This document shows positions 1,576-63,060 of a stretch of DNA of 64,000 bases, in pieces (position 1 is the stretch's first letter; each line of letters opens with the position of its first letter). Position numbers and translations under genes: made by a program. Under the pieces are notes generated by a model, which made no database searches, was not told the DNA's origin, and saw nothing but the letters and a program-made list of their open reading frames with translations. The DNA is from Octopus sinensis (lineage: Eukaryota): NCBI RefSeq assembly GCF_006345805.1, contig NC_043004.1, forward strand, positions 48,732,001 through 48,796,000. The letters run 5' to 3'.

Positions 1576-3169
1576 TAACTTTTAATTACCCACAAGGGGC
1601 TGGTATAGAGGGGACAACACAAAAACGTGGGGACACATAACATGAAAAAAATAAAATAAAAAAAATAAAATTTAAAATATGGTAACATGAATGATACATG
1701 AAAATGAAACATGAAAGTGAGTTGCTTGCCTCACCTCAAGTAGCAAAACTTATTTCCTTCTGAATCCCAAGTCCTTCAAAATGTCCAATCCGAATTTTTC
1801 TCAGTTCTTCATATTCTACTTTTACCGGTATCCTTTACAGGTTCACATCAGTCTTCCAATATTTACAACCTTTTTTATATTTTGCAATCACTTCCTTCAG
1901 GCTCTGAGACACGTGTACACACATGTGCCAACCCACAACATTCGTGTATCCCTCCACATCCACAAATTTTGCTGTCTTCCTCCTTGTTACCTCATTTATT
2001 AGTTCCTCGTCTACATCCTCTCTCAACACACATACATAGCTATTTTCACAGGGGTGGCGGTGTATTTTGTGTGTTTTGTGATGTCTGTTTCTCTCTTTTT
2101 TTACATTGTGAAGGCAGGGAATGGGTGGGTTTGGTGTCTGTGGGGAGAGGGTGGGTCTCAGAGGTTATGGATGGGGATGGCTTGGGGTTCCACATCACAC
2201 TGTCCTTTCTTCCTTCTGCAACTGTCCATAATTCTTCCTTTTTCCTTTCTTCCATCTGTACCTCCTCTTGCTTCTTCTCCAACTCTTTATCCACTTTTTC
2301 CAGACTATGCTTCTGCGGAGGGCAGTGTGCTCTAATGTGGGCCTTTTGGCCACATTTAAAACAGCGAGGGATTCTTCTCTCCACTCACACTCTCAAGATT
2401 ATGTCTCCCACAGTCACCGTCTCCGCCAAATCTTCCAAGGATTATACTTCAGCCTGAACAAGAAGTTCTAATGTTTTTCCTTTCCACATCATCTCCTCCG
2501 TTTCTGTGACTTGGAGGACAGCCACTTCCTCCTCACTTCTGAGGAGGACAGCCGCCGCAACCCAAGCCATATCTGTGTCTGGCAAGATTCCCTCTACCCT
2601 GATCTTGGATGTCCTTCTTCCAAGATACATGAGTAGAAGGACCACTTTATTCGACTTCACCGTGTTTACAGCCAGCCTCCTTGCTACTTCCTCCATCTTA
2701 AACTGGACCACCACCGTCCCATATTTGCTTCGTCTTGCCAAAAACACCATATCCTTAGATACCGCGCACAATGCCTTCTCAGTTGTTTCAGCTTCTACTA
2801 GGTCTACCTTTTTCTGTTCCACTAAATGAACATGCTTCATCATGTCCTCCATAACTTTCAGTGGAGATGATGACTTCATGTCACCACCTACTTTATGTGC
2901 CATTTTTTGATGTTCTTCCATTTCAGACAAGTCTATTTCATTCCTTTTTAACTCCAATTCCTCAGTGAAGCTCTTTTTTTTTTCCCCAACACATCTGTCC
3001 ATTCTGTTTACTGCCTTTACTAATTCCTTCTCTGAAGTGGACAATTCCAACCTGCTAAAGTTCAAATAGAACATTTTTCAATTAGCCATCGCTACCTCTC
3101 TGGGTAAACAGCTGCAAAGCAGCACAAAAATCGACACTTCAATACAACTCGATACATGTTAAAAAAATA
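1576..3169 (-). mobile_element. gag/ORF1-only retroelement unit A (Tx1/L1-type ORF1 with CCHC zinc knuckle)
   Basis: Broken ORF from ATG 3089 to ~1835 (track ORFs 2442-3074, 2046-2384, 1835-2029). Knuckle CFKCGQKAHIRAHC (CX2CX4HX4C) at 2322-2363. ~250 bp T-rich 3' UTR ending CCCCTTGTGGGTAATTAAAAG. No endonuclease or RT. Confidence 0.75.
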
Positions 3170-3189: not shown

Positions 3190-4370
3190 TTGATTTTTTT
3201 ATTACCCACAAGGGGACATATAAAAACGGAAAAAAAAGGAAAAAATAAAAAATTAAAATGTATGATATACATGAATGATACAATGAAAATGAGTTATTTG
3301 CCCCACCTCATGTAGCCTCACTTGCTTCCTTTCATCTTTTAAATTCCGTGGGGTGGATATGGTATTGGGGTTCTACTTCACTCTGTCCTTTCTTCCTCTT
3401 CCTTTTTCTTCCTTCAGTCACCATCCACTGTTCTTTGTTTCTCTTTTCTTCCTGCTGCACCATCTCCAGCTCCTTTCCAACTTCCTCCTGACTTCTCTGC
3501 TTCTGTCAAGGGCAGTGTGACCTTTTTTTGGCCACATTTAAAGCAACGAGGGGTCCTGCCCTTCACCCACACTCTCAACACTACATCTCCAATGGTCACC
3601 ATTTCCACCACATTTTCTAGTGTTTCTGCAGTGCTCTGTATTATCAGGTCCAATGTTTGGCCTTTCTATACTGAATTTTCTGTTTTCGTGGCTTGGAGGA
3701 CGGCTATTTGTTCTTTACTTCCTAAAAAAACAGTCGCCGCATCCCAAGCTACATCTATTTCCGGTGGGATTCCTTCCACCCTAATCCTTCTTCCAAGATA
3801 AGTGGGTAGAAGGACCACTTTATCCAACTTTACTATGGTTACTCTGTGTTTTTTTGCTTTCCCTTCTGTCTTGAAATGGACCAAAATTGTTCCATATCTG
3901 CTTTCTCTGGCAAGATATGTTATGTCTAGCCAGACGGAGCACAACAACTTTTCTATTATTTCTGCCTCAACATTTTCAATTTTCCTTCCGTCCACTGAGT
4001 ACATCTTGTATATTACTGTCTTCTTTTCCATTTCTTCCAATACTTTCTGTGGCAGTGACAACTTAACGTCACCACCTATCCTACATGCCATTTTCTTGTA
4101 TTTCTCCATGTTTGTCAGGTCCACCTCCCTTTTTGTGACTTCTTTCACTTCCGCAAAACTTTTCTCCCTTAAGCACTTGTCCATTCTATCAACTGCTCAT
4201 ATGAGCTCTTCCTCCGAAGAGGACAATTCGGACCCACTAAGGTCCGAATAGAACATGTTTCTTACTGTTGACATTGCTGACCCTCCTCACGGCGGAGAGA
4301 AAGCACAACCAGAAAACCTCTTCAAAGCAGCACAACACACTCCTCAACAAAAAAACAATTCTCACAGAAC
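3190..4370 (-). mobile_element. gag/ORF1-only retroelement unit B, diverged paralogue of unit A
   Basis: ATG 4274; MFYSDLSGSELSSSEEEL aligns with unit A MFYLNFSRLELSTSEKEL. Both units share YLGRR.IRVEGI.P and RVWVKGRTPRCFKCGQK. Knuckle interrupted by a small deletion. The 3' UTR is homologous and ends CCCCTTGTGGGTAATAAAAAAA. Confidence 0.72.
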
Positions 4371-5500: not shown

Positions 5501-6056
5501 TTTTGTTAATCTTCAGAAATTATTGTTTTACTCAGTGTAAAGCTATGCAATACGTTACAGATTATTTGTTTAAAAAAAATCTTTTCGTTAACATTTTGTG
5601 CCAATGTGACCCTATAATACATCATTCTACACAATCCTCCACCATTATAAAGTGGCTCAGAATGTTCCCAGAACTAAGATTTGGCAATATATGTGTGTGT
5701 GTATATATACACACATATATATACATATATATGTAAATATATGCATATATATGTATGTATATACATGAGTATATATATATACATATATATGTATATATAT
5801 GTGTATATATATATATACATATATATATATAAGTAAATGTATATATATATATATATACATATAAATATGCATATATATGTGTATATATATATACACATAT
5901 AATATGCATATATATGTATGTATATACATGAGTATATATATATACATATAAATATGCATATATATGTGTGTATATATATATATATACACATATAAATATG
6001 TATATATATGTGTATATATATATACACACATATAAATATGTATATATATATGTGTG

Positions 6057-6087
<31 letters not shown>

Positions 6088-6098
6088 AAATATGTATA

Positions 6099-6142
<44 letters not shown>

Positions 6143-6800
6143 TACATATATATATTAATGGATGAATGAATTATCCTTTGTTTACAGTTAACACAGAAAA
6201 TTCAGTAAACAATTACCAGGTTAGCAAAATTCACACAAGTAACAAGGATGTATCGACCTATTCAAAGGTAGAAACTCCGGGTTAATTTGCAGTAATTTGT
6301 ATAGTATAAGTAAATAAATGGAGTTGAATGCAGGTGTTATTCAAATTCTTTTACTTTCGACATATGTTTTGAAGACAACATTGTTTTTATCCCAAAGGAA
6401 TAAAACCAATGTTGTTGAAAGTAAAGGAATTTGAATAACACCTACGTTCAATTTCATTTATTTACTTATATATATATATATGTATATATGTATATATATG
6501 TGTATATATATGCGTATATATATGTGTATATATATATGTATATATATATTTATATATATGTATATATATATTTATATATATGTATATATATGTATATATA
6601 TGTGTATATATATATGTATATATATATGTATATATATATGTATATGTGTGTATATATGTATATTATATGTATATAATTAATTAATAGGGTGAGAGAATTA
6701 GATACTAATTTATAGTATATTATTCAACACCAAGTGGCCTAGTGCTACGAGAAACCTGGATTATTATAATATTTTATAACATATATAATATTTTTACAAA

Positions 6801-7212
6801 ATAAATATAAGAGAGTGGTCACTATATTGCTCACTCTAGCACCAGTTAATCCAAAAGGTTTCAACCACGAAAATACATGTTTCCCATGAAAGCCAGTACG
6901 ACCGTTAGCTCACACGGACAGGGCAAGTAAAAAATAACAAAAATACAGATTATTTTGGGACAATTGTTTCGCTATTAATGAATTAAATGTAATATTACTT
7001 ATTTTTTTTTTTGTAAGTATATTACATTTAATTCATTAATAGCGAAACAATTGTCCCAAAATAATCTGTATTTTTGTTATTTTTTACTTGCCCTGTCCGT
7101 GTGAGCTAACGGTCGTACTGGCTTTCATGGGAAACATGTATTTTCGTGGTTGAAACCTTTTGGATTAACTGGTGCTAGAGTGAGCAATATAGTGACCACT
7201 CTCTTATATTTA
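6801..7212. repeat. near-perfect ~200 bp inverted repeat with ~12 nt T-rich spacer
   Basis: Left arm ~6801-7001 is the reverse complement of right arm ~7014-7212, with only about two single-base indels seen, both near the arm ends. Confidence 0.95.
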
Positions 7213-7288
7213 TTTTATATATGTATATATATGTATATATATGTATATATATGTATATATATATGTATGTATATATATGATATATATG

Positions 7289-7327
<39 letters not shown>

Positions 7328-7489
7328 GTATATATATATGTATTATCTATATATGTATTATCTATATATGTATATATATATATGTATATATATGTATATA
7401 TATATGTATATATATATATGTATATATATGTATATATATATGTATATATATATATGTTATATATATGTAATATATATATGTATATAATG

Positions 7490-7520
<31 letters not shown>

Positions 7521-7781
7521 GTATATATATGTATATGTATATATATATATGTATATATTTGTATATGTATATATATGTATATGTATATATATATATATGT
7601 ATATATACATATATATGTATGTATATATATATATGTATATACATATATATATACATATATATACATACATGCATATATATATATGTATATATGTATGTAT
7701 ATATATATATATGTATGTATATATATGTATATATACATATATTATACATACATGCATATATATATATATGTATATATGTAT

Positions 7782-7815
<34 letters not shown>

Positions 7816-7980
7816 TGTATATATATTATATGTATATATGTATGTATGTATATATATATATATATATATTGCTTATTCTGATTATAATCACCCCACTGAT
7901 TTTTATGGATAACACCATTCAAAATTCTGGTGCATCTAAATTTAAGTACCATATTCATTTGAATCTAAATTTTTGCTGAA

Positions 7981-8029
<49 letters not shown>

Positions 8030-8103
8030 AATGTGACCATGTGTGTACCGTTGGTGATTTTTTTCCCTCCGTCTTCCCTTCTCTGGATCTTTCCTTTTCT
8101 TAA

Positions 8104-8138
8104 GTTTCTGACGAAGAGCTCCACTCGAAACGTTAAAC
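8104..8138 (+). ncRNA. minimal type I hammerhead ribozyme motif (Penelope-like element terminal repeat type)
   Basis: GTTT-CTGACGA-A-GAG ctcca CTC-GAAA-CGTT-AAAC: stem I GTTT/AAAC, CUGANGA core, stem II, GAAA, palindromic ACGT stem III, predicted cleavage after 8134. Confidence 0.75.
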
Positions 8139-8324
8139 CCTTCTTCCCTTCCTTCCTGAGCGTCCAATAATACTATATTTGTTCCACGTCCTCGCGTTGT
8201 TGTGTTTTCTCTTTGTGTTTTCATGTTTGGATTAACTATATATATTATATATATATATATATTATATATGTATAAGGGTGGAAAGGAATATATATATATA
8301 TAGGTTAGGGTTAGGGTTAGGGTA

Positions 8325-8355
<31 letters not shown>

Positions 8356-8358
8356 ATA

Positions 8359-8404
<46 letters not shown>

Positions 8405-8405
8405 G

Positions 8406-8500
<95 letters not shown>

Positions 8501-8504
8501 GCAC

Positions 8505-8547
<43 letters not shown>

Positions 8548-8868
8548 TATATATACATATACATATATATGTATATATGCATATATATATGTGTGTGTGT
8601 GTGTGTATATATATAACCGAGTTCATATTTTCTTCTCAAATTTCTTTACGCACTAATACTCTCTCATACACACACACACACTCTTCTCATACACACACAC
8701 ACACTCTTATGTTGGAGGGAGATCATTTAACCCTATTATCTCCCCTAATTTCGCTCTTGCATCTCACGTTTGATCTTTGACTTCTGGCCGAAATCAAATC
8801 GCCATGTTGATTCACTAGCCTCTGCACACATTTTTTCTCTCCTTCTTTCTGTGTTTCTTCTCTGTGTA

Positions 8869-9399: not shown

Positions 9400-11300
9400 T
9401 GGGAATGAGTACGCTTGATTAATATAACATGATTTGGTTTAGAAGGAACAGAATGTTACAAGTAGTTTGGTTTTGCTTTATATTTCTTTCAATGAGGTGA
9501 GTTTTCTTATTTAAAAATGTTAGAAATGGTTAAGTTTTGGCTTATATTTTTCAATGAAGTAGGTTTCCTTATTTACTCTAACTTGTGTTGGTGTTCCAAT
9601 GGCACATTGATAGAATGGACAGATTACAAATTTTGGTAGCAGTTGCTTTGCGCATTTCTCAATATGTTCACTAAAGGGTATCATTCTGTATTCTGGGAAT
9701 GCAATCTGTTGTCGATGCAGAGTGCATCTGCATCTGAGCAATAATCCCGTGGACCCTATGTAGTGTTGGCGGCAGCCTGAGCATCTTATGACATAAATCA
9801 GGTTTTCTGAAGTACAAGTAAAGTCAGATTTGATTTTGAATTTTTGTCACTCCTTGAAGAGGAATTCTGATCCTTCTAGAAGGTTTGGGCATGTTGTGCA
9901 ATTTGGTCTACCACATTTTTAAACTTTTGCGTCCGTTATTTTAGAAAACAATTTTGCCTTTGTGAGGATCTTTTTTAGTGATTTCGGTTGTTTGTAGCTT
10001 TTAATGATTTTATGTGTGTGTAAAATTTCCTTTAATTTGGAGTCCATATGTAGCATTGGTAAATTTTGGGTGATGATGGTGAAGGCTTCTTTGTTTCTGG
10101 GGTTGTATGTCGATATGTACGGCAGTATTTTCGGGGAAGGTGTGTTGCTGTGTTGAACTTTTCTTAAAGTTTCTATGTCGATTTCTGTTGCATGTCTGAT
10201 TCCACCCTCTATGAGTTGAATTGAACTGGGTAGTGTCTGTCAATTAGGGTGTTTTTGAGTTCTTGCAGTCTAAAGTTTCTGGTATTTTGTTCTGACGCTA
10301 TTGTGCATATCCTTCTTGCAAGGTTGAAGGGGATGTTTGTTTTGGTGTGTCTTCAGTGGCATGAATTAAATAGTAGATATTGTTTTGCGTCTGTGGTTTT
10401 GTAAAATATGTCCGTTTCTATTTTTAGGTTTATTTTTTTAATTAGTATATCTAAGAATGGAAGCTCCTTTTGGTTGTACTCCATTGTGAACTGTTTGTTT
10501 TGGTTGACGCTGCTCAATAGTCTTTTGAATTTCAGGAGTTTATCTGTGTTTTCATTCCAGAGTATGAAACAGTCATCTAGGAATCTTTTCCAATTTTCTT
10601 TTATGTATTGGGAAAGGGGGTTTCCAAAGGTAGATAGAGATTCCTGATATATTATTACCTCCAGGTAGCCCATTGTTAGGTTCACAATGACTGGTGCTGC
10701 CCTAATACCCATAGCAATTTCGGATTTTTGTTGGTAAAGCCTATTATCAAACATGAAGTGATTATTTTGTAGGATGAATTTAACCAATTTAGTTGTGAAT
10801 TCTTTACTGATCCTTTTTGATATTTCTTCCAGAAATTGGTCCAGCCAGAACTGAATTGCCTCTAGCCCATAATTATGAGGTATACTGGTATATAAATTAA
10901 CTACATCAAATGAAACCATGATTGTTTCTTCCTTGACTTTTTTGGAAGGTGATTTAACATATCCAAGTCATCTCTGATATGGCTATTGATGTGTTTAAGG
11001 AAGGGTTTCAGGATGATGTCCATAAATAGACAGTCTGTGTGTTTCACAGGCTGGGCCAGCTACAATGGGTCGTAGTTTTAGGTGCCCCGGGTTTTGTGTA
11101 TGTATGTACATCTTTGGTGATTTTTTAATGGTTTTATTTATAATCTGGCTTTTGTGTATTTTTGGTAGACCATAGAAAAGGCTAGGTTTGCATTTAAAGT
11201 TTGTTAGAAAGTCAGTCTTTTTGGTTGTCAGTTCATTTCCATGGGTTTAATTATTTTTTGCGGGATCTAGTTTGTGATTTTTTCATAATGTTGACTCTCA
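9400..11300 (-). mobile_element. Penelope-like element (RT + Cys-rich linker + GIY-YIG), decayed
   Basis: RT motifs VSFDVVNLYTSIP, IAMGIRAAP and WKRFLDDCFILW (10353-10919); linker KCGRPNCTTC; endonuclease LIYVIRCSGCRQHYIGSTG..HRQQI (~9520-9830). Confidence 0.88.
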
Positions 11301-13431: not shown

Positions 13432-15112
13432 ATCATCATCATCATCATCATCGCTTAGCGTCCGTTTTCCATGCTAGCATGGGTTGGACGGTTCTACTGG
13501 GGTCTGTGAAGCCAGAAGGCTTCATCAGGCCCAGTCAAATCTGGCAGTGTTTCTACGGCTGGATGCCCTTCCTAACGCCAACCACTCCGTGAGTGTAGTG
13601 GGTGCTTTTTACGTGCCACCCGCACTGGTGCCAGACAGAGCTGGCAAACGGCCACGAACGGATGGTGCTTTTTATGTGCCACCGGCACGAGGGCCAGGCG
13701 AGGCTGGCAATGGACATGAAACGGGGCGGTGCTGGCAACGGTCGCGAAACGGAAAGTTCTCTTACATGCCACCGGCACTGGTAACACATCTGCAATTTCC
13801 ATTGATCGATTTCGATTCTGATCGTCACTTGCCTCAACGGGTCTTCACAAGCAGAGTTTTGACATGCCACCGGCACTGGTAGCACATCCGCAATTTCCAT
13901 TGATCGATTTCGATTCTGATCCTCACTTGCCTCATCACGTCTTCACAAGTAGAGTTTTGTGTCCCAAGAAGGGAAGGTATGCATACGTAGGCTGGCTCCA
14001 TCCCATGTAGAAGGCCACGGGTTATGGACTCACTTGTCCTGCCGGGTCTTCTCGCGCACAGCACACTTCCAGAGGTCTCAGTCTCTAGTCATTTCCTCAG
14101 TGAGACCTAAAGTTCGAAGGTCGTGCTTCACCACCTCGTCCCAGGTTTTCCTGGGTCTGCCTCTTCCACAGGTTCCCTCAACCGCTAGGGTGTGGCACTT
14201 TTTCACACAACTATCTTCATCCATTCTCGCCACATGACCATACCAGCGCAAACGTCTCTCTTGCACACCACAACTGATGCTTCTTAGGTCCAGCTTTTCT
14301 CTCAAGGTACTTACACTCTGCCGAGTGTGAGTACCGGCATTACACATCCATCGGAGCATACTGGCTTCATTTCTAGCGAGCTTACGCATATCCTCAGCAG
14401 TCACGGCCCATGTTTCACTGCCATGTAGCATGGCTGTTCGTACACACGCATCATACAGTCTGCCTTTCACTCTGTGCGAGAGGCCTTTTGTCACCAGCAG
14501 AGGTAAGAGCTCTCTGAACTTTGCCCAAGCTATTCTTACTCTAGCAGTTACACTTTCAGCACACCCGCCCCCGCTGCTGACTTGGTCACCTAGGTAACGG
14601 AAACTATCAACTATTTCTAGTTTTTCTCCCTGGAATGTGACGGAAGTTGGTCTCAGAGCATTTTCAGTGTTTATTGTTCCTGAGCATCTGCCACATACAA
14701 AAACCATCTTCCTAGTTAGCCTTCCTTTGACATTGCTGCATCTCTTATGTGTCCATAGCTTACACTTGGTGCATCTTATAGAGTTTCTACCTACACCTTT
14801 TCTACAGATCGAGCAGGGCCATCTACCTGAAGGTGTTTGTGATTTGTCTACCTTCCTACTGATTACGACTTTGGTTTTAGCTAGATTGACTCTGAGGCCC
14901 TTCGATTCTAATCCTTGTTTCCACACCTGGAACTTCTCCTCCAGTTCTGATAGCGACTCAGCAATTAGAGCAAGGTCATCAGCATAGAGGAGCTCCCAAG
15001 GGCATCCTGTCTTGAATTCCTCCGTTATTGCCTGGAGGACTATGATAAATAGGAGGGGGCTGAGGACTGAGCCTTGGTGGACTCCTACCTCTACCCGGAA
15101 TTCTTCACTGTA
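13432..15112 (-). mobile_element. 5'-truncated RTE-clade LINE (RT C-terminus + 3' UTR + (GAT)n tail)
   Basis: ELLYADDL at ~14970-14995; ORF 14078-14926 with FRYLGD..YGSETW-like and GRGRPRKTW motifs; 3' UTR ends GCATGGAAAACGGACGCTAAGCGATGATGATG. Confidence 0.92.
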
Positions 15113-16874: not shown

Positions 16875-17594
16875 AAAATACAACATAACAGAATCAATAA
16901 TTACGTTAGTTGTTTCCAAGCATTTTTACCCTCTAGGATCTTTTAAATTAGCCGTGATTTTTGGCTTATTTTATTAATATGTAAATAATTTCTGAGTGTA
17001 TCGTTAACTCAAAACAAATATATGAACCCACTATTTTACATTTCCGAGATCTAACAGGACGAACTTAGGCACTGGAGGTCAATGTAAATGGAAAACTACC
17101 TTATCATACATAATTATAACTACAGGGTCTTCGTTTTTCAAAGTTAATCCGTTGATATCTTGTTAAGCTGTATGAAAGTTTACAGCGCATGGCCCTACTT
17201 TGTTCTGGCTATTTAATTAAATATTTTAATCAAAGGATCTGTTTTTATCTGAATGTCTGCAGCAACAGTAAACTCCATTTCAATATTTTTTTGCCAGAGA
17301 GTAAAATCAGAAATTCGTCAGCGCGTTTACAGTTATTGGTGAGATCAAAATACTGATTTTTTTCCGACTACTCCGATCGATAAATTTGTACTGACACCCC
17401 CACCATTCTTTACGGTCTACAAGTTTGTTTGATTATTTCATGCATGGCGTTCAGTAACGCGTTCATATTTTTCGTTCTTTTTCTCTTTTTCTGGAAGAAA
17501 TTGGGAGTTTTTCTCTTTCACTGTCCGTAAAGGTGATAACTGAACGTTAGTGTTAACCTGTTTCACACATATCAGTTTACACACAAATAGATAC

Positions 17595-18058
17595 TATTTC
17601 TTTAATACCCACCCACAAGGGGCTAAACATAGAGAGGACAAACAAGGACAGACACACGGATTAAGTCGATTACATCGACCTCAGTGCGTAACTGGTACTT
17701 ATTTAATCGACCCCAAAAGGATGAAAAGCAAAGTCGCCCTCGGCGGAATTTGAACTCAGAACTTAACGACGAGCAAAATCCCTATTTCTTTACTACTCAC
17801 AAGGGGATAAACACAGAGAGGACAAACAAGGGACAGACAAACGGATTCGACCCCGAAAGGATGACAGGCAAAGTCGCCCTCGGCGGAATTTGAACTCAGA
17901 ACGTAACGATGAGCGAAATCCCTATTTCTTTACTACTCACAAGGAGATAAACACAGGGAGGACAAACAAGGGACAGACAAACGGATTCGACCCCGAAAGG
18001 ATGACCGGCAAAGTCGACCTCGGCGGAATTTGAACTCAGAACGTAGCGGCAGACGAAA
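17595..18058 (-). mobile_element. tandem trimer of the GGCGGCGAGCTGGC-head SINE family (5'-truncated units), one insertion
   Basis: Three head-to-tail units containing GCCGAGGTCGACTTTGCC..TCATCCTTTCGGGGTCGA; 16-bp TSD ACACACAAATAGATAC at 17579-17594 and 18059-18074. Confidence 0.88.
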
Positions 18059-18074
18059 ACACACAAATAGATAC

Positions 18075-18956
18075 ATGTACGCTATGTTATTAATTTTATC
18101 TTTATTATTTTCCAACATGTTTTCTGCCTTCGGTTGGTCCTATGACCATCCCGAGCTTTGGGCAGACATATTTCCAAATTGCAATTTGTCTGCTCAAAGC
18201 CCTGTCAATATCGAGGTGGACTATGCTACATATGTTGACTGGTGGGGAACTGTAACGTATTTTAATACGAAGAACAACAGTAAAGTGGAATATTTTTTGT
18301 TTATCAGCGAAAGTGTTTTGAAAGTACAAATATATGGGAATTTGGTATTAGATAGCAGAAGTCTTCCGGTGATTTTTCAAACTCTTCAGCTCCATTTCCA
18401 CTGGAGGAATAACAATATCACACATGGATCTGCACATTATATTGATGGCAAAGGATTTCCACTCGAAATGCAAGTTATTAATAAAAATTCCTACTACAGA
18501 GATTTAACCACCGCAGTACATTATCCGGATGGTTTCGCAATAATGGCATTTTTCTTTGAAATAGAATTTCATGATAACCCCTTGCTCAATAAAATTATTG
18601 ATCTTCTTCCTAATTTAGGTTCAAGATCAATGCAAGTGGAAGGCTTCAATCTAAGTGAATTAATGCACGAAGGACTCAGAAAAAACCATTTCTTTCAGTA
18701 CAACGGTAGCATACCAATTCCTCCTTGCAACGAGTGTGTCATCTGGATCATTGTTAAGAATCCTCTTTCGATATCACAAAGACAACTCAAGAAAATCTGG
18801 AAATTGAGCAAGAGAGTTGATATGTTTGATACTAACGTCCGTCCAGTTCAACCAATTTACGAGCGATTAGTTTGGAAGAATTTCTCAGCCGCTGATAAAG
18901 CCATTAGTTCTTGCTTTTTGTCTCTTATTTCTTACAATATCATGTATTTAACTTGA
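18075..18956 (+). CDS. intronless alpha-carbonic-anhydrase-related protein, secreted/possibly GPI-anchored, predicted acatalytic (293 aa)
   Basis: Signal-like MYAMLLILSLLFSNMFSAFG, then WSY, LWADIFP, C..QSPVNI, QLHFHW, GSAH, FPLEMQ, PDGFAIMAFF, YNGSIPIPPCNECVIW and NVRPVQP, followed by a hydrophobic C-terminus. Whole domain lies in one uninterrupted frame. The 15 upstream codons of the track ORF come from the SINE/TSD. Confidence 0.9.
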   Translation: MYAMLLILSLLFSNMFSAFGWSYDHPELWADIFPNCNLSAQSPVNIEVDYATYVDWWGTVTYFNTKNNSKVEYFLFISESVLKVQIYGNLVLDSRSLPVIFQTLQLHFHWRNNNITHGSAHYIDGKGFPLEMQVINKNSYYRDLTTAVHYPDGFAIMAFFFEIEFHDNPLLNKIIDLLPNLGSRSMQVEGFNLSELMHEGLRKNHFFQYNGSIPIPPCNECVIWIIVKNPLSISQRQLKKIWKLSKRVDMFDTNVRPVQPIYERLVWKNFSAADKAISSCFLSLISYNIMYLT

Positions 18957-19260: not shown

Positions 19261-19266
19261 AATAAA
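19261..19266 (+). terminator. candidate polyadenylation signal for the CA-like gene
   Basis: AATAAA ~300 bp after the stop codon in AT-rich sequence; could occur by chance. Confidence 0.3.
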
Positions 19267-19473
19267 AAGATATTAAAGGAAGAGATTTGCAATCGACATT
19301 CATTAATCAAGATGTTAATGAAGACTGAAATATTTCTGGGACCACTTACTTTTTTCTATCAGTTATAACTTCTTTTTTTTTTTTTTTTAATGTTATTTCA
19401 AAATAAGTGTATGTGAGGCATGAATCTTAGGTTGTTAGAACTTACTTCAAATTTCAATATTAATCCTTATGTT

Positions 19474-57017: not shown

Positions 57018-57796
57018 CATACATTCATTTGTTCATTTGTTTGTTCTCTTCTGCTTTTAATCATTTGGATTCTTCCTCTGAAGAAGCTGATTTCTAACAA
57101 AAATACAATTTCCATTGTCAGAATGTATGTATGTATGTATGTATGTATGTGTTAGTGTGTGTGTGTATTCATGTCGTCTTGTCATGACATCATTTGATAG
57201 TTGTAAATGAGTGTCACTGCCATACAAGCTATCATTCATTTCCAATATTCTGCAAACAAGAAGATGTCTGGCCACAAGGAAAATAATGGCTAAGTTGAAA
57301 ACAGATGAAAGTTGGCAACAAGAAAGGCATTCAGCTATAGAAAATCTGCCTCAATAAAATCTGTCTGACTGTGCAAGCATGGAAAAGCAGATGCTAAAAT
57401 GATGATGATGACTCCAAGGCAGGGGATCGGTACAATTGTTACATTTTTGAAAAAGGTACCTTTTGCTCTGACCCTTTACATTCTGATATTTTGTGTGGTA
57501 GATTTATGCCATAATCTGATTTAACGCCAAAACCTAGTCCTTGAATGCCTTAAGCATAGTCCACTCTGTTGCAAGATTTTGAATAGGGTTTCTGGTTTGA
57601 AGAAATCTTCTCCTTCATCCTGCCAGTTTTTAAAGTCTTGAAAAAATAAAGGATCATAGATGCTGCCTATTCCTCTCTGACTACCCCTTTGTTCTTGTTT
57701 TTTTTAAAAATCTTTCCCTGATGACCCTTACTCCTGATTACTCTTTTTTTCCTAATTGCTCTTATCTCATTGATAACCTTGCCCTCAATGACTGCC

Positions 57797-60234
57797 GTTC
57801 TCTTCTAGACTGTCCTTCCCTTCTCGACAGTCTTTCTCTTCTAGACAGTCCTTCCCTTCTAGACAGTCCTTCCTTTCTAGATAGTCCTTCCTTTCTAGAC
57901 AGTCCTTCCTTTCTAGACAGTCTTTCCTTTCTAGACAGTCCTTCCTTTCTAGACAGTCCTTCCTTTCTAGACAGTCCTTCCTTTCTAGACAGTCCTTCCT
58001 TTCTAGACAGTCCTTCCTTTCTAGACAGTCTTTCCTTTCTAGACAGTCCTTCCTTTCTAGACAGTCCTTCCTTTCTAGACAGTCCTTCCCTTCTAGACAG
58101 TCCTTCCTTTCTAGACAGTCCTTCCTTTCTAGACAGTCTTTCCTTTCTAGACAGTCCTTCCTTTCTAGACAGTCCTTCCTTTCTAGACAGTCCTTCCTTT
58201 CTAGACAGTCCTTCCTTTCTAGACAGTCCTTCCTTTCTAGACAGTCCTTCCTTTCTAGACAGGCCTTCCTTTCTAGACAGTCCTTCCTTTCTAGACAGTC
58301 CTTCCTTTCTAGACAGTCTTTCCTTTCTAGACAGTCCTTCCTTTCTAGACAGTCCTTCCTTTCTAGACAGTCCTTCCTTTCTAGACAGTCCTTCCTTTCT
58401 AGACAGTCCTTCCTTTCTAGACAGTCCTTCCTTTCTAGACAGTCCTTCCTTTCTAGACAGTCCTTCCTTTCTAGACAGTCCTTCCTTTCTAGACAGTCCT
58501 TCCTTTCTAGACAGTCCTTCCTTTCTAGACAGTCCTTCTTTCTAGACAGGCCTTCCTTTCTAGACAGTCCTTCCTTTCTAACAGTCCTTCCTTTCTAGAC
58601 AGTCTTTCCTTTCTAGACAGTCCTTCCTTTCTAGACAGTCCTTCCTTTCTAGACAGTCCTTCCTTTCTAGACAGTCCTTCCTTTCTAGACAGTCCTTCCT
58701 TTCTAGACAGTCCTTCCTTTCTAGATAGTCCTTCCTTTCTAGACAGTCCTTCCTTTCTAGACAGTCCTTCCTTTCTAGACAGTCCTTCCTTTCTAGACAG
58801 TCCTTCCTTTCTAGACAGTCCTTCCTTTCTAGACAGTCTTTCCTTTCTAGACAGTCCTTCCTTTCTAGACAGTCCTTCCTTTCTAGACAGTCCTTCCTTT
58901 CTAGACAGTCCTTCCTTTCTAGATAGTCCTTCCTTTCTAGACAGTCCTTCCTTTCTAGACAGTCCTTCCTTTCTAGACAGTCCTTCCTTTCTAGACAGTC
59001 CTTCCTTTCTAGACAGTCTTTCCTTTCTAGACAGTCTTTCCTTTTAGACAGTCCTTCCTTTCTAGACAGTCCTTCCTTTCTAGACAGTCCTTCCTTTCTA
59101 GACAGTCCTTCTTTCTAGACAGTCCTTCCTTTCTAGACAGTCCTTCCTTTCTAGACAGTCCTTCCTTTCTAGACAGTCCTTCCTTTCTAGACAGTCCTCC
59201 TTTCTAGACAGTCTTTCTTTCTAGACAGTCCTTCCTTTCTAGACAGTCCTTCCTTCTAGACAGTCCTCCTTTCTAGACAGTCCTTCCTTTCTAGACAGTC
59301 TTCCTTTCTAGACAGTCCTTCCTTTCTAGACAGTCCTTCCTTTCTAGACAGTCCTTCCTTTCTAGACAGTCCTTCCTTTCTAGACAGTCTTTCCTTTCTA
59401 GACAGTCCTTCCTTTCTAGACAGTCCTTCCTTTCTAGACAGTCCTTCTTTCTAGACAGTCCTTCCTTTCTAGACAGTCTTTCCTTTCTAGACAGTCCTTC
59501 CTTTCTAGACAGTCCTTCCTTTCTAGACAGTCCTTCCCTTCTAGACAGTCCTTCCTTTCTAGACAGTCCTTCCTTTCTAGACAGTCTTCTTTCTAGACAG
59601 TCTTCTTTCTAGACAGTCCTTCCTTTCTAGACAGTCCTTCCTTTCTAGACAGTCCTTCCTTTCTAGACAGTCCTTCCTTTCTAGACAGTCCTTCCTTTCT
59701 AGACAGTCCTTCCTTTCTAGACAGGCCTTCCTTTCTAGACAGTTCTTCCTTTCTAGACAGTCCTTCCTTTCTAGACAGTCTTTCCTTTCTAGACAGTCCT
59801 TCCTTTCTAGACAGTCCTTCCTTTCTAGACAGTCCTTCTTTCTAGACAGTCCTTCCTTTCTAGACAGTCCTTCCTTTCTAGACAGTCTTTCCTTCTAGAC
59901 AGTCCTTCCTTTCTAGACAGTCCTTCCTTTCTAGACAGTCCTTCCTTTCTAGACAGTCCTTCCTTTCTAGACAGTCCTTCCTTTCTAGACAGTCCTTCCT
60001 TTCTAGACAGTCTTTCCTTTCTAGACAGTCCTTCCTTTCTAGACAGTCCTTCCTTTCTAGACAGTCCTTCCTTTCTAGACAGTCCTTCCTTTCTAGACAG
60101 TCCTTCCTTTCTAGACAGTCTTTCCTTTCTAGACAGTCCTTCCTTTCTAGACAGTCCTTCCTTTCTAGACAGTCCTTCCTTTCTAGACAGTCCTTCCTTT
60201 CTAGACAGTCTTTCCTTTCTAGACAGTCCTTCCC
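57797..60234. repeat. 18-bp minisatellite (TTCTAGACAGTCCTTCCT)n, ~135 units
   Basis: Continuous tandem array of ~2.44 kb with a few recurrent variants and occasional 17-bp units. Confidence 0.98.
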
Positions 60235-61479: not shown

Positions 61480-62555
61480 AAAGTTAGATGAGGCACTTAG
61501 GACAGGCATCGTAACTGATGTGTTGGTGGTGAGATTGCCCTTCAACCAATTTTTCAACGCCAAACACAAAGGCTGCGTTGTCAGAGCTAAGGCATGTTCA
61601 CTAAGCGGGGAGGGAATGAAAGAGTCATGATGGGCCCACATGGTAGAGGTGAAAAGTGGCAATAAAGCCATCATTTGGTCTTTGGTGAACCAAAACGGAT
61701 GCATGGTGTTTGAGCCGAAATAGATGTGTGTGGCTTTTCAGATGTGTGAGGCTTTGCTTGATTGTTCGGGATGAATGGTAGGACAGATAACAGGGCAAAC
61801 TCCGGTGTCTACCCAGACAGCCTGGCACAACTCTCAGCGAGTGAGACAGAGTGCAGCGAAAGTCTGATAACAGCCACGGAGATACAGGAAGCGATGAAGA
61901 GTTGCACTAGATCACTGGGTTTGGATGGTCTGCCCTATGAGCTTTATATTTCAATGCCAGATTTGTTTGCGGGCCTGTTAGCAAACGTTTATTGCAACTA
62001 GCAGCAGAATGGGAGAATTCTCACTTTTGTCTGTCAAGGGGCAGTGTCACTGCTGAGAAAGGACTCAAACAAGGGGAACGTTATAGAGAATTTCAGGCCC
62101 ATCACTCTGCTGAATGCAGAGTTGAAGATTTTGGCCAAGGTGTTAGCCAAGAAGTTGGCACTTGTCGTGGACAAACTGGTTGGCGAGGCACAAACATGTG
62201 CCATCCCAGCCAGGAGTATTCACGATAACCGCCATCATAGAAAGATGGGTAATGATGCTGGCATGGGTGGGGCTCTGATCAGTTTTGATCAATCTAAAGC
62301 CTTTGATAGGGTCGACCATCAATACTTGGCAGCTGTCCTCAAGGCAGCTGGTTTTGGTCCTGTTTTCCATGGTTGGATTGCTGCTTTGTACAGCAGCATT
62401 TGCTTGGTTGTTCGGGTGAATGGTCACCTGTTGGAGCCATTCAGCATCTTGCATTCGGTGCGTCAAGATTGTCCTCTCTCTTCTTTTCTGTATGTACTCA
62501 CTCTTGAGTCATTACTGTGGAAGTTGGAGGTTTTGAGGGGTATCCTGAATGATCT
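61480..62555 (+). mobile_element. L1/Tx1-clade reverse transcriptase fragment
   Basis: KGCVVRAKA linker; GLDGLPYELY; FRPITLLNAELKILAKVL; AQTCAIPARSIHDN; DQSKAFDRVDH; VRQDCPLS. Confidence 0.88.
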
Positions 62556-63060
62556 AGGATGTGGAACAGAGGAATAGTGATGGCTGTCAGTTCCAAAAGC
62601 AACATCTCTGTGGATGGAATGCCACGTCATGTCTTAGATGTTTTTAGGATTGTTGCTTCGTCAGATGATGATTGTGGAGAGGAGGAAGAGAATGAGATTT
62701 CCAGCTTAAGAAGATCACAACATGCAAGATGCCCACCTGGGTGGGTGTTAGATTTCGACATGGAGTGAAGTGAAGAGGGGATCTTTGAGATCACGGGGGC
62801 GTGTGGGGATGAGCTGGAAAAAGAGAGTCATGACATCAATGGTCAAGGGACTGACCAAAAGAGGAAGTGAAAGAGGGGAAGTGGGGTGAAAATTGGCCTC
62901 TTCTTGCCCACCAGAGGCATTGTGAAGGGATGTTAGGGAATTTACACCTGGGTTGGTCAGATAGCAGTTGCTTATATTGGGTGACAGGGTAGGGCAGGAT
63001 CGCCAGAGAGATTACTGCTAGACAGGCAAAGACGAGAGAGGAAGGGAGGCGAACCACTTT
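62556..63060 (+). mobile_element. gypsy-type 3' end: integrase C-terminal region, purine tract and probable LTR
   Basis: WNRGIVMAV..ISVDGMPRHVLD..RRSQHARCPPGWVLDF; ACGGGGGCG followed by TGTGG at ~62802. Confidence 0.6.

What the first reader, a model, noticed from the sequence alone, without database searches (positions are those of the whole stretch)
18075..18956. Intact carbonic-anhydrase-fold gene that has selectively lost its catalytic residues
Seen, by alignment to established human CA II motifs: His94 and His96 retained (QLHFHW); His119 to Gln (ELH -> EMQ); Glu106 to Ala (GSEH -> GSAH); Thr199/Thr200 to Pro/Ile (GSLTTPP -> GSIPIPP); no His at the His64 position. Structural features are all kept: WSY, QSPVNI, the N-terminal Cys / PPC disulfide pair of extracellular CAs, NxRPxQP, and six N-glycosylation sequons. 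The 293-codon frame is open while the surrounding TE ORFs are mostly decayed. Established: vertebrate CARPs and the RPTP-gamma/zeta CA domains are acatalytic and include His119Gln changes, but CARP VIII/X/XI also lose His94. Inference: an independently evolved extracellular pseudo-enzyme, possibly a CO2/bicarbonate or ligand sensor, an adhesion protein or a biomineral matrix protein.
Basis: partly seen in the sequence, partly recalled or inferred. Interest (0 to 1): 0.8.

Follow-up and report, generated by a model that had tools for sequence, protein, structure and literature searches.

The report
Fast-evolving dead carbonic anhydrase retrogene
An octopus gene made from a reverse-transcribed carbonic anhydrase message has lost its catalytic residues, yet three species keep it as an open reading frame while its surface changes unusually fast, so it is probably a non-enzymatic extracellular protein rather than an enzyme or dead DNA.

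Summary
Window 18075-18956 (+) is an intact 293-codon alpha-carbonic-anhydrase (CA) gene. It keeps His94 and His96, but carries H119Q, E106A, T199P/T200I and no His64.

New findings:
- It has no introns, whereas its closest catalytic relatives (octopod GPI-type "CA15-like" genes) have 7 coding exons. It is therefore a processed retrogene.
- Its O. bimaculoides orthologue (XP_052826225.1, named "carbonic anhydrase 2-like") sits at the syntenic site, inside an intron of an ATG10/ATG3-like gene. A third octopod copy also exists.
- E106A, T199P and NNGH->ISES are shared by all three copies. The zinc ligands are lost separately: H119Q only here, H96Y in another species.
Neutral decay is nevertheless rejected. 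No copy has a premature stop (simulated P about 0.04, 0.05 and 0.002 per branch). All indels in the CDS body are in frame, while 84% of flank indels are not. Variability follows fold conservation. The least-conserved third of codons has omega 2.2-3.0 (p = 8e-5 to 0.003).
- In this species a 464-bp SINE-like element with a 16-bp target duplication sits directly against the ATG.

Verdict: a lineage-specific, fast-evolving extracellular pseudo-enzyme. It is a new variant of a known kind. Its function and expression are untested.

The parts
18075..18956 (+). Single-exon CDS (293 codons plus TGA) of the acatalytic alpha-CA-like retrogene. An alternative conserved start lies at 18084.
   Evidence: The orthologous single-exon genes are O. 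bimaculoides L002:10001-10882 and L001:353-1264.
18075..18134 (+). N-terminal hydrophobic signal-peptide-like segment (aa 1-20, MYAMLLILSLLFSNMFSAFG).
   Evidence: Read from the sequence. AF2 predicts a helix at aa 2-15 with low pLDDT. It aligns with the signal peptides of the octopod CA15-like proteins. In-frame 3-nt and 9-nt indels fall here.
18135..18887 (+). Alpha-carbonic-anhydrase fold domain (aa 21-271).
   Evidence: Pfam PF00194 covers aa 25-270, E = 6e-55. Foldseek target-normalised TM is about 0.87 to CA II, IX-mimic and XIV.
18303..18314 (+). ISES (aa 77-80) in place of the NNGH motif (Asn61, Asn62, Gly63, His64). The proton shuttle is lost, and the replacement is identical in all three species.
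18393..18401 (+). HFH: zinc ligands His94 (H107) and His96 (H109) are retained.
   Evidence: His96 is Tyr in the L001 species.
18432..18434 (+). Ala120 (GCA) at the Glu106 gatekeeper position. It is shared by all three species.
18471..18473 (+). Gln133 (CAA) at the His119 zinc-ligand position. This change is specific to the window lineage (His in the other two species).
18714..18719 (+). Pro214-Ile215 at the Thr199-Thr200 positions. Pro199 is shared by all three species.
18888..18953 (+). C-terminal tail (SAADKAISSCFLSLISYNIMYLT). It is homologous to the GPI-signal-like tail of the catalytic octopod CA15-like proteins but only weakly hydrophobic.
   Evidence: The tail is read in another frame in O. 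bimaculoides (1-nt indel) and is extended by stop loss in L001.
17263..17594 (+). Ancestral upstream region (putative promoter or 5' leader). It is conserved in both other species and contiguous with the ATG there.
   Evidence: 92.9% identity to O. bimaculoides and 83% to L001. Alignment.
17579..17594 (+). Upstream copy of the 16-bp target-site duplication ACACACAAATAGATAC.
17595..18058 (.). A 464-bp SINE-like insertion specific to the window lineage. It contains a 140-bp unit repeated 2.4 times (17707-18045) and adds four upstream ATGs with short uORFs.
   Evidence: It is absent from L002 and L001.
18059..18074 (+). Downstream copy of the target-site duplication. It ends at position -1 of the start codon.
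19261..19277 (+). AATAAA and ATTAAA about 305-320 nt after the stop codon: candidate polyadenylation signals. They are conserved in O. bimaculoides but not in L001.

Best explanation
This is an octopod-specific processed retrogene. It was copied from the mRNA of an extracellular, GPI-type alpha-carbonic anhydrase (CA4/CA15-like) and landed in an intron of an ATG10/ATG3-like gene.

Before the three sampled octopod lineages split, it lost the proton shuttle (NNGH -> ISES) and both gatekeepers (E106A, T199P). It therefore cannot hydrate CO2 at any useful rate. That last step is inferred from published CA II mutant work, not measured here. With catalysis gone, the zinc ligands became dispensable and are being lost independently: H119Q here and H96Y in another species.

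The protein is still made and selected. The reading frame and the fold-critical residues are preserved, while the least-conserved, presumably surface, positions change faster than neutral DNA. The most likely mode of action is as a secreted or weakly membrane-tethered glycoprotein that uses the CA fold as a binding scaffold. Its partner would itself be changing quickly, so the protein could be a decoy or competitor related to its catalytic paralogue, which is also fast-evolving. This mode of action is inference.

In the window's species a recent TE insertion directly in front of the ATG may have weakened expression.
For: Retrogene origin:
- The CDS is one 882-bp exon here and in O. bimaculoides.
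- The closest catalytic relatives have 7 coding exons spread over 24-29 kb in O. vulgaris and Argonauta, and the Patella relative is also split into several exons over 8.3 kb.

Orthology and age:
- The window is colinear with O. bimaculoides CM046608.1 on both sides. Flank K2P averages about 0.086.
- A third copy exists at CDS K2P 0.27.

Loss of catalysis:
- All three copies share A106, P199 and ISES.
- H119Q and H96Y are each private to one lineage.
- 171 of the 197 nearest CA domains keep H-H-H-E-T.

Not a neutral pseudogene:
- The simulated probability of no stop codon is 0.04, 0.05 and 0.002 on the three branches.
- Flanks carry 93 indels per 11.5 kb, 84% of them not a multiple of 3. The CDS body has only in-frame indels.
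- Against L001 there are 17 indels in 706 bp of flank, but 4 in-frame indels in 858 bp of CDS.
- Variability among the three copies tracks conservation among canonical CAs (rho = 0.39, p = 2e-10; 23% versus 75% variable sites in the extreme quartiles).

Diversifying selection:
- ML omega is 1.2 overall.
- With codons partitioned a priori by canonical-CA conservation, omega is 0.76, 1.13 and 2.24. The variable third exceeds 1 with p = 8e-5. It is still 2.97 with p = 0.003 when each partition has its own synonymous rate.
- The ML estimator was unbiased in simulation.
- CDS divergence (K2P 0.144) exceeds flank divergence (0.086).

Family context:
- The catalytic CA15-like paralogue also shows omega about 1.5 between Octopus-level species, while its UTRs are about 90% identical.

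Remodelled cavity kept:
- I61, S62, S64, K67, Q69, A106 and P199, and the second-shell residues Q92, E117 and N244, are invariant in the three copies.

Fold:
- The AF2 and Foldseek results are given.
Against: - There is no expression evidence. The exact protein is not in the 15-billion-protein collection, and only one annotated orthologue and one unnamed Logan contig exist.
- Omega in the most conserved third (0.76) is not significantly below 1 (p = 0.26), so direct evidence for purifying selection on amino acids is weak.
- Much of the M1a/M2a signal (2dlnL = 32) disappears when site-to-site rate variation is allowed in the null model (2dlnL = 7).
- The C-terminal tail is frameshifted in O. 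bimaculoides and extended by stop loss in L001. It is only weakly hydrophobic here, so the mode of membrane anchoring is unclear.
- A SINE-like insertion with four uATGs lies between the ancestral leader and the ATG.
- Only three sequences were available, and the codon models are my own implementation.
- The binding or decoy mechanism is untested.
- Flank divergence comes from BLAST-selected blocks, so it may be biased low.
Confidence: 0.55

Rival explanations
1. It is an unconstrained retrocopy in slow decay. On this view it is a processed pseudogene, or a gene that lost its function in the common ancestor, whose frame happens to be still open. The catalytic and zinc-site losses, the tail frameshift and the TE insertion would all be steps of decay.
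For: dN/dS is 0.93-1.05 (NG86) and 1.2 (ML), not different from 1. Omega in the conserved third is not significantly below 1. Zinc ligands have been lost independently. There is a tail frameshift in one species and a stop loss in another. A TE with a target-site duplication abuts the ATG. No transcript-derived copies were found in the protein collection.
Against: The joint probability of three open frames under neutral substitution is about 5e-6 (product of the branch values). About 5-6 frameshifting indels are expected against O. bimaculoides and about 17 against L001, yet none is seen in the CDS body. Substitutions avoid fold-critical columns (p = 2e-10). One third of the codons evolve faster than neutral. 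The remodelled pocket residues are invariant. A very recent loss of function in the window species alone is not excluded.
Confidence: 0.2
2. It is still an enzyme, either a weak carbonic anhydrase or esterase or a catalyst of another reaction. It would use a His2Gln (or His3 in O. bimaculoides) metal site inside a remodelled pocket.
For: His94, His96, the second-shell residues Q92, E117 and N244, and most cavity residues are conserved. From my own knowledge, His-to-carboxamide variants of CA II at position 119 still bind zinc, though weakly. Solved H119N/H119Q CA II structures appear among the matches.
Against: Three separate parts of the mechanism are gone in all three species: the proton shuttle, Glu106 and Thr199. 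From my own knowledge, E106A and T199P each lower CA II activity by about three orders of magnitude. The structural studies of these variants are cited in PMC12069641. The zinc triad differs between the three orthologues (HHQ, HHH, HYH), which is not expected for a metal-dependent catalyst.
Confidence: 0.05
3. It has one of the reader's specific roles: a CO2/bicarbonate sensor, an adhesion molecule of the RPTP/contactin type, or a matrix protein of a calcified structure such as statolith or stylet.
For: Its architecture is extracellular: a signal-peptide-like N-terminus, the Cys23-Cys203 pair and sequons. CA-fold binding modules and skeletal CAs are known (PMC4981384; PMC6639325).
Against: A sensor of a fixed small molecule, or a partner of a conserved receptor, would be expected to be conserved, as the classical CARPs are (96-100% identity between human and mouse; PMC2873310). 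This protein is only 70% identical across about 9% neutral divergence. It has no repeat or acidic insert of the nacrein type. No cephalopod sequence falls in the nacrein cluster (PMC6639325).
Confidence: 0.08

Closest known systems
Octopod GPI-type catalytic alpha-CAs ('carbonic anhydrase 15-like' of Octopus vulgaris, P0186; Argonauta hians 'CA2-like', P0187; Logan transcripts P0066 and P0185)
   Same: These give the highest single-domain HMM scores outside the trio (207 bits). They have the same layout: a signal peptide, one CA domain with the Cys23-Cys203 pair, and a short hydrophobic tail ending in ...SYLS, compared with ...MYLT here. They also evolve fast (omega about 1.5).
   Different: They have 7 coding exons against none here. 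They keep all catalytic residues (NNGH, HHH, E106, T199). They are only 34-37% identical to the window protein, and the tree placement of the trio next to them is weakly supported (26-30% bootstrap).
Vertebrate and bilaterian CARPs (CA VIII, X, XI)
   Same: They have the alpha-CA fold and are made acatalytic by active-site substitutions. CA X and XI are secreted. Gln at position 119 occurs in the R-H-Q triad of CARP X (PMC4981384).
   Different: The window gene is not orthologous to them. It retains His94, whereas CARPs typically have Arg there. It is silenced through Glu106, Thr199 and His64 rather than, or before, the zinc triad. CARPs are among the most conserved CAs (PMC2873310), whereas this gene evolves at or above the neutral rate. 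It is intronless.
Lineage-specific secreted CARPs of cnidarians and calcareous sponges
   Same: They are extracellular CA-fold proteins that became acatalytic repeatedly and independently from secreted catalytic paralogues. The authors propose them as possible acatalytic competitors of those paralogues (PMC4981384; PMC4265532 listed).
   Different: Those proteins were defined by loss of zinc histidines and often arose by tandem duplication. The octopod gene arose by retroposition, lost the gatekeepers first, and comes with evidence of ORF-preserving plus diversifying selection.
CA-like domains of receptor tyrosine phosphatases RPTP-gamma and RPTP-zeta, and the poxvirus CA-fold attachment protein (named only)
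   Same: They are precedents for an inactive CA fold used purely as an extracellular binding module (knowledge; mentioned in PMC2873310).
   Different: Those are domains of larger proteins with conserved partners. This is a stand-alone 293-aa protein with a rapidly changing surface.

Membership tests
Alpha-carbonic anhydrase fold family (Pfam PF00194) | Full-length match to the family profile above the curated cut-off | tested here: met
   187 bits against a cut-off of 27, E = 6e-55, profile positions 2-254 of 254.
Alpha-carbonic anhydrase fold family (Pfam PF00194) | Predicted 3D fold superposes on solved alpha-CAs | tested here: met
   AF2 pLDDT 84.7. Foldseek E about 3e-24, target-normalised TM about 0.87, rmsd 2.3-3.0 A to CA II, IX-mimic and XIV.
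Catalytically competent alpha-CA | Three zinc-binding histidines (His94, His96, His119) | tested here: not met
   H, H, Q in the window. H, H, H in O. bimaculoides. H, Y, H in L001.
Catalytically competent alpha-CA | Gatekeeper pair Glu106 and Thr199 | tested here: not met
   Ala and Pro in all three species. The combination is unique among the 197 nearest CA domains.
Catalytically competent alpha-CA | Proton shuttle His64 (or an equivalent) | tested here: not met
   Ser80 within ISES replaces NNGH in all three species.
Catalytically competent alpha-CA | Measured CO2 hydration activity and bound zinc | not testable with these tools
   This needs recombinant protein.
CARP in the literature sense (alpha-CA lacking at least one zinc His) | At least one of His94, His96 and His119 is replaced | tested here: met
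   H119Q in the window protein. The O. bimaculoides orthologue would not meet this criterion although it shares the other lesions.
CARP VIII/X/XI orthologue groups | Closest relatives are CARP VIII, X or XI, with the R-H-Q-type triad and very high conservation | tested here: not met
   The nearest relatives are catalytic CA4/CA15/CA12-like extracellular CAs. His94 is retained. Identity is 70% across about 9% neutral divergence, against 96-100% between human and mouse for CARPs.
Extracellular (secreted or membrane-associated) alpha-CA class | N-terminal signal peptide and the conserved Cys23-Cys203 disulfide pair | tested here: met
   A hydrophobic N-terminus aligns to the signal peptides of the relatives. 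C36 and C218 are invariant in all 25 aligned sequences. No dedicated signal-peptide predictor was available.
GPI-anchored CA (CA4/CA15 type) | C-terminal omega site followed by a strongly hydrophobic tail | tested here: inconclusive
   The tail is homologous to that of the CA15-like proteins, but the best 12-aa Kyte-Doolittle mean is 1.60 here, against 2.9 in the catalytic relatives. The tail frame or length differs in the other two species.
Processed retrogene | Lacks the introns present in related genes | tested here: met
   There is a single 882-bp exon here and in O. bimaculoides. Six introns lie at conserved positions in O. vulgaris and Argonauta, and the Patella relative is also split into several exons.
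Processed retrogene | Poly(A) remnant and target-site duplications of the retrocopy itself, and an identified parent gene | tested here: inconclusive
   Only short A and T runs follow the stop codon and no flanking duplication was found. Attachment of the trio to the CA15-like clade has 26-30% bootstrap support.
Nacrein-like shell-matrix CA | CA domain interrupted or extended by an acidic or Gly-x-Asn repeat region | tested here: not met
   The alignment to ordinary CAs is continuous with no insert.

The most novel reading that the evidence does not exclude
Octopod extracellular CA-fold proteins, both the catalytic CA15-like enzyme and this dead retrogene, are caught in a molecular arms race, either host-pathogen or host-parasite, or reproductive conflict. 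The retrogene would have been retained as a catalytically silent decoy or competitor for whatever ligand targets the enzyme's surface. It would then be a pseudo-enzyme silenced gatekeeper-first and kept by diversifying rather than purifying selection.
Probability: 0.12. Interest if true: 0.75.

Novelty: new variant of a known kind. Interest (0 to 1): 0.45.

Why it matters
Acatalytic CA-fold proteins are a classic pseudo-enzyme family whose functions are still poorly understood. The known ones are defined by lost zinc histidines and are extremely conserved. This octopod gene differs in three ways.

First, catalysis was removed through the gatekeeper pair and the proton shuttle, and the zinc ligands eroded later and independently. 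A screen that looks only at the histidines therefore misses orthologues such as the O. bimaculoides protein, which is annotated as an ordinary 'carbonic anhydrase 2-like'.

Second, the gene arose by retroposition.

Third, it combines strict preservation of the reading frame with amino-acid change at or above the neutral rate. That pattern points to a binding role with a rapidly changing partner.

The locus also gives a compact natural test of which parts of the CA fold stay under selection once chemistry is gone. If confirmed, it would add a cephalopod case to the list of fast-evolving extracellular pseudo-enzymes.

Tried and rejected
- Second copies in the window: tblastn found none.
- Exons of the ATG10/ATG3-like host gene in the window or in L002: tblastn with a human ATG10 sequence recalled from memory gave only noise. 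The host-gene statement therefore rests on the O. bimaculoides gene call and on synteny.
- Compensated frameshifts as the cause of the hypervariable stretch at aa 47-66: the nucleotide alignment shows only substitutions and one 6-nt deletion.
- Standard M1a/M2a test as proof of positive selection: it is strongly significant (2dlnL = 32) but mostly absorbed by a null model with site-rate heterogeneity (2dlnL = 7). I therefore relied on an a-priori partition instead.
- Branch-specific relaxation in the window lineage: the free-ratio model is no better than one ratio (1.38, 1.12, 1.13).
- Shared hypervariable sites between the dead gene and its catalytic paralogue beyond general column variability: not significant within conservation strata.
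- Identifying the species behind the Logan runs: a literature search on the run accession found nothing relevant.
- Prior description of this gene: none found. One survey only counts 'at least 10' alpha-CA genes in O. bimaculoides.
- Resolving the parent gene by NJ phylogeny: the trio is a long branch and its placement is weak.
- Pfam scans of the neighbouring ORFs: these showed only TE fragments.
Full report
**1. What is there.**
Window 18075-18956 (+) is an uninterrupted 293-codon ORF, the longest non-repetitive ORF in the 64-kb window. It matches the eukaryotic-type carbonic anhydrase profile PF00194 end to end (E = 6e-55). Its best solved relatives are CA XII (2.6e-32) and CA II. An AlphaFold2 model built on 25 homologues is confident (pLDDT 84.7, pTM 0.81) and superposes on CA II, CA IX-mimic and CA XIV with target-normalised TM about 0.87. 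No second copy exists in the window. The surroundings are microsatellites, SINE-like repeats and fragments of reverse-transcriptase ORFs.

**2. The residue claims.**
I aligned the protein to human CA II, checking the numbering in the script, and to 197 near-full-length CA domains.
- His94 and His96 are kept.
- His119 is Gln.
- Glu106 is Ala.
- Thr199/Thr200 are Pro/Ile.
- The NNGH(64) motif is ISES.

The Cys23-Cys203 pair, Trp5, Tyr7, Gln92, His107, Glu117, Tyr194, Trp209, Asn244 and Arg246 are kept. Six sequons are present. Of the 197 domains, 171 carry the full H-H-H-E-T set. The E106A plus T199P combination occurs only in this gene and its two orthologues.

**3. Relatives and orthology.**
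Among 5.8 billion protein clusters, only two are close. One is the O. bimaculoides protein A0A0L8GUI8 / XP_052826225.1, named 'carbonic anhydrase 2-like' (70% identity). The other is an unnamed Logan contig protein (61% identity). An exhaustive profile search of 1.84 billion representatives found no further member. The next best single-domain score drops from 566 to 207 bits.

The O. bimaculoides gene is a single 882-bp exon on CM046608.1. It lies inside the span of a same-strand gene whose 214-aa product has an Autophagy_act_C domain. The window is colinear with that locus on both sides, with flank identity of 88-94.5%. The window therefore holds the orthologous locus of a closely related Octopus species. 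The exact window protein is not in the public collection.

**4. Origin.**
The nearest catalytic relatives are octopod 'CA15-like' proteins with a signal peptide, one CA domain and a hydrophobic GPI-signal-like tail. Their genes have 7 coding exons over 24-29 kb in O. vulgaris and Argonauta hians, with intron positions shared between the two. The Patella relative is also split into several exons over 8.3 kb. The window gene has none of these introns, so it is a processed retrogene. Its parent cannot be named with confidence. In an NJ tree the trio is a 100%-supported long branch that attaches to the cephalopod GPI-type clade with only 26-30% support. I found no poly(A) remnant or target duplication of the retrocopy itself.

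**5. Order of losses.**
A106, P199 and ISES are identical in all three species, so they predate the splits between them. The zinc triad differs:
- H-H-Q in the window.
- H-H-H in O. bimaculoides.
- H-Y-H in the third species.

The simplest reading is that catalysis was abolished through the gatekeepers and the proton shuttle, and that the metal ligands became dispensable afterwards. From my own knowledge, E106A and T199P each reduce CA II activity by roughly three orders of magnitude, while carboxamide substitutions at position 119 weaken zinc binding without abolishing it. The structural papers on these variants are cited in PMC12069641, and solved variant structures appear among my matches. 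The combined effect in this protein is an inference, not a measurement.

**6. Is it a pseudogene?**
It is 0.93, 0.95 and 1.05 for the three pairs by Nei-Gojobori and 1.20 by a one-ratio codon model. My ML estimator recovered true values of 0.3, 1 and 2 without bias in simulations, while Nei-Gojobori read slightly low.

Neutral decay does not fit the rest of the data:
- (a) Stop codons. Starting from the majority sequence and applying the observed number of substitutions, the chance of no stop is 0.04, 0.05 and 0.002 on the three branches.
- (b) Indels against O. bimaculoides. Flanking DNA carries 93 indels in 11.5 kb, 84% of them not multiples of three. The CDS body has only a 3-nt and a 9-nt indel.
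- (c) Indels against the third species. The flanks have 17 indels in 706 bp, while the CDS has 4, all in frame, in 858 bp.
- (d) Site pattern. Sites that vary among the three octopod proteins are those that vary among canonical CAs (Spearman 0.39, p = 2e-10). In the most conserved quartile 23% of sites vary, against 75% in the least conserved (Fisher p = 6e-7).

The exception is the last 15 or so codons. O. bimaculoides has a 1-nt indel that changes the tail frame, and the third species has lost the stop codon and gained 14 residues.

**7. Faster than neutral.**
Between the window and O. bimaculoides the CDS has K2P 0.144, dN 0.157 and dS 0.168, against a length-weighted flank K2P of about 0.086. 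The flank blocks were chosen by BLAST and may be biased low, but the two immediately adjacent flanks give 0.076 and 0.112.

A standard M1a/M2a comparison is highly significant (2dlnL = 32, 13% of sites at omega about 11). Most of that signal is absorbed if the null model allows a class of generally fast sites (2dlnL = 7). I therefore partitioned codons a priori by the entropy of the same columns in 22 canonical CAs. Omega is 0.76, 1.13 and 2.24 for the conserved, middle and variable thirds. Heterogeneity has p = 1e-7, and the variable third exceeds 1 with p = 8e-5. With a separate synonymous rate per partition the variable third has omega 2.97 (p = 0.003). Omega does not differ between branches.

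The picture is a preserved frame and fold core with a diversifying periphery. The evidence for purifying selection on amino acids in the core is indirect, because omega of 0.76 is not significantly below 1.

**8. A family trait.**
As a control I compared the catalytic CA15-like gene between a Logan transcript and O. vulgaris. It also gives omega 1.51 (bootstrap 0.95-2.58; 3.6% of replicates at or below 1). The UTRs are 89-91.5% identical, but coding exon 2 is only 72% identical. Against Argonauta, omega is 0.34 with saturated dS. Rapid change therefore characterises this group of octopod extracellular CAs, whether catalytic or not. This shows that omega near or above 1 is compatible with a live gene in this family. 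It also suggests that the selective agent acts on the protein surface rather than on catalysis.

**9. The former active site.**
Of 34 cavity or second-shell positions, 21 are invariant in the three species. These include all seven that differ from the catalytic consensus (I61, S62, S64, K67, Q69, A106, P199). The hydrophobic wall varies only conservatively. This was noticed after the fact and is only suggestive, but it fits a remodelled pocket that is kept.

**10. State of the copy in this window.**
A 464-bp SINE-like element (17595-18058) contains a 140-bp unit repeated 2.4 times with 94% matches. It is flanked by a perfect 16-bp duplication, ACACACAAATAGATAC, at 17579-17594 and 18059-18074. 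The second copy ends at position -1 of the ATG. The element is absent from both other species, where the conserved upstream region runs straight into the start codon. It adds four upstream ATGs with 10-13-codon uORFs.

Together with H119Q and a weakly hydrophobic tail, this leaves room for a recent impairment of this particular copy. Even so, its own branch is unlikely to have been neutral throughout. The chance of no stop is 0.04, and the chance of no frameshift is about 0.06 from flank indel rates.

**11. Comparison with known systems.**
By the literature definition (loss of at least one zinc His) the window protein is a CARP, but it is not a CARP VIII/X/XI orthologue. Those are exceptionally conserved (96-100% between human and mouse; PMC2873310) and typically carry R-H-Q (PMC4981384).

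The closest conceptual precedent is the repeated, lineage-specific invention of secreted CARPs from secreted catalytic CAs in cnidarians and sponges. The authors of that work suggested these could be acatalytic competitors (PMC4981384). The octopod gene differs from these in its retrogene origin, its gatekeeper-first silencing and its evolutionary rate.

I found no paper describing this gene. One survey merely counts at least ten alpha-CA genes in O. bimaculoides (PMC6639325).

**12. Verdict.**
The interpretation as an independently evolved extracellular pseudo-enzyme is supported at the family level, with the corrections above. The mechanism I commit to is a secreted or loosely anchored glycoprotein that uses a catalytically dead CA fold as a binding or decoy scaffold under diversifying selection. 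That the gene is retained as a non-catalytic protein rests on sequence evolution. How it acts is inference. Expression, metal content, activity and binding partners are all untested.

Noticed in passing
L003:139-1008 versus L006 exons (O. vulgaris OX597814.1, 98.50-98.55 Mb): The catalytic octopod 'CA15-like' GPI-type carbonic anhydrase, with all catalytic residues intact, also evolves very fast between Octopus-level species. It gives dN 0.20, dS 0.13 and omega about 1.5. The UTRs are about 90% identical, but coding exon 2 is only 72% identical. This may be positive selection on an active extracellular enzyme.
   Followed up: partly
L002:10001-10882 and L001:1222-1264, compared with window 18900-18956: The C-terminal tail is unstable between orthologues. 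A 1-nt indel in O. bimaculoides shifts the last 14 or so codons into another frame that is still hydrophobic. In the third species TGA has become TGG, which extends the protein by 14 residues.
   Followed up: yes
window 2442-3074 (-) and 3666-4184 (-): Two paralogous ORFs of 210 and 172 aa have similar sequences and no Pfam match. The region is conserved with O. bimaculoides (L002:73-1292, 67-87% identity). They may be an unclassified TE protein or a duplicated gene fragment.
   Followed up: partly
window 5600-8650: This is a very AT-rich tract (GC about 0.20) of compound TA/TATG-type microsatellites. It produces long spurious 'YIYIYI' ORFs on both strands.
   Followed up: no
window 57721-58545: A minisatellite with an 18-bp period can be read as (PSFLDS)n for 274 codons. 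It lies in a region of extreme strand composition skew (GC skew -0.48, AT skew -0.40).
   Followed up: no
window 14078-14926 (-); also 10353-10919 (-) and 62044-62577 (+): These are TE remnants. One is a 282-aa ORF with a weak PHD/C1-type zinc-finger match, and a copy of it lies inverted in the O. bimaculoides locus (L002:19329-20520, 88% identity). The other two are partial reverse-transcriptase ORFs (RVT_1, E = 3e-4 and 4.5e-16).
   Followed up: partly
L002 (O. bimaculoides CM046608.1:92286751-92307632) and the whole window by synteny: The retrogene lies inside an intron of a same-strand gene that encodes a 214-aa Autophagy_act_C (ATG10/ATG3-like) protein. I could not locate any exon of that host gene in the window.
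   Followed up: partly
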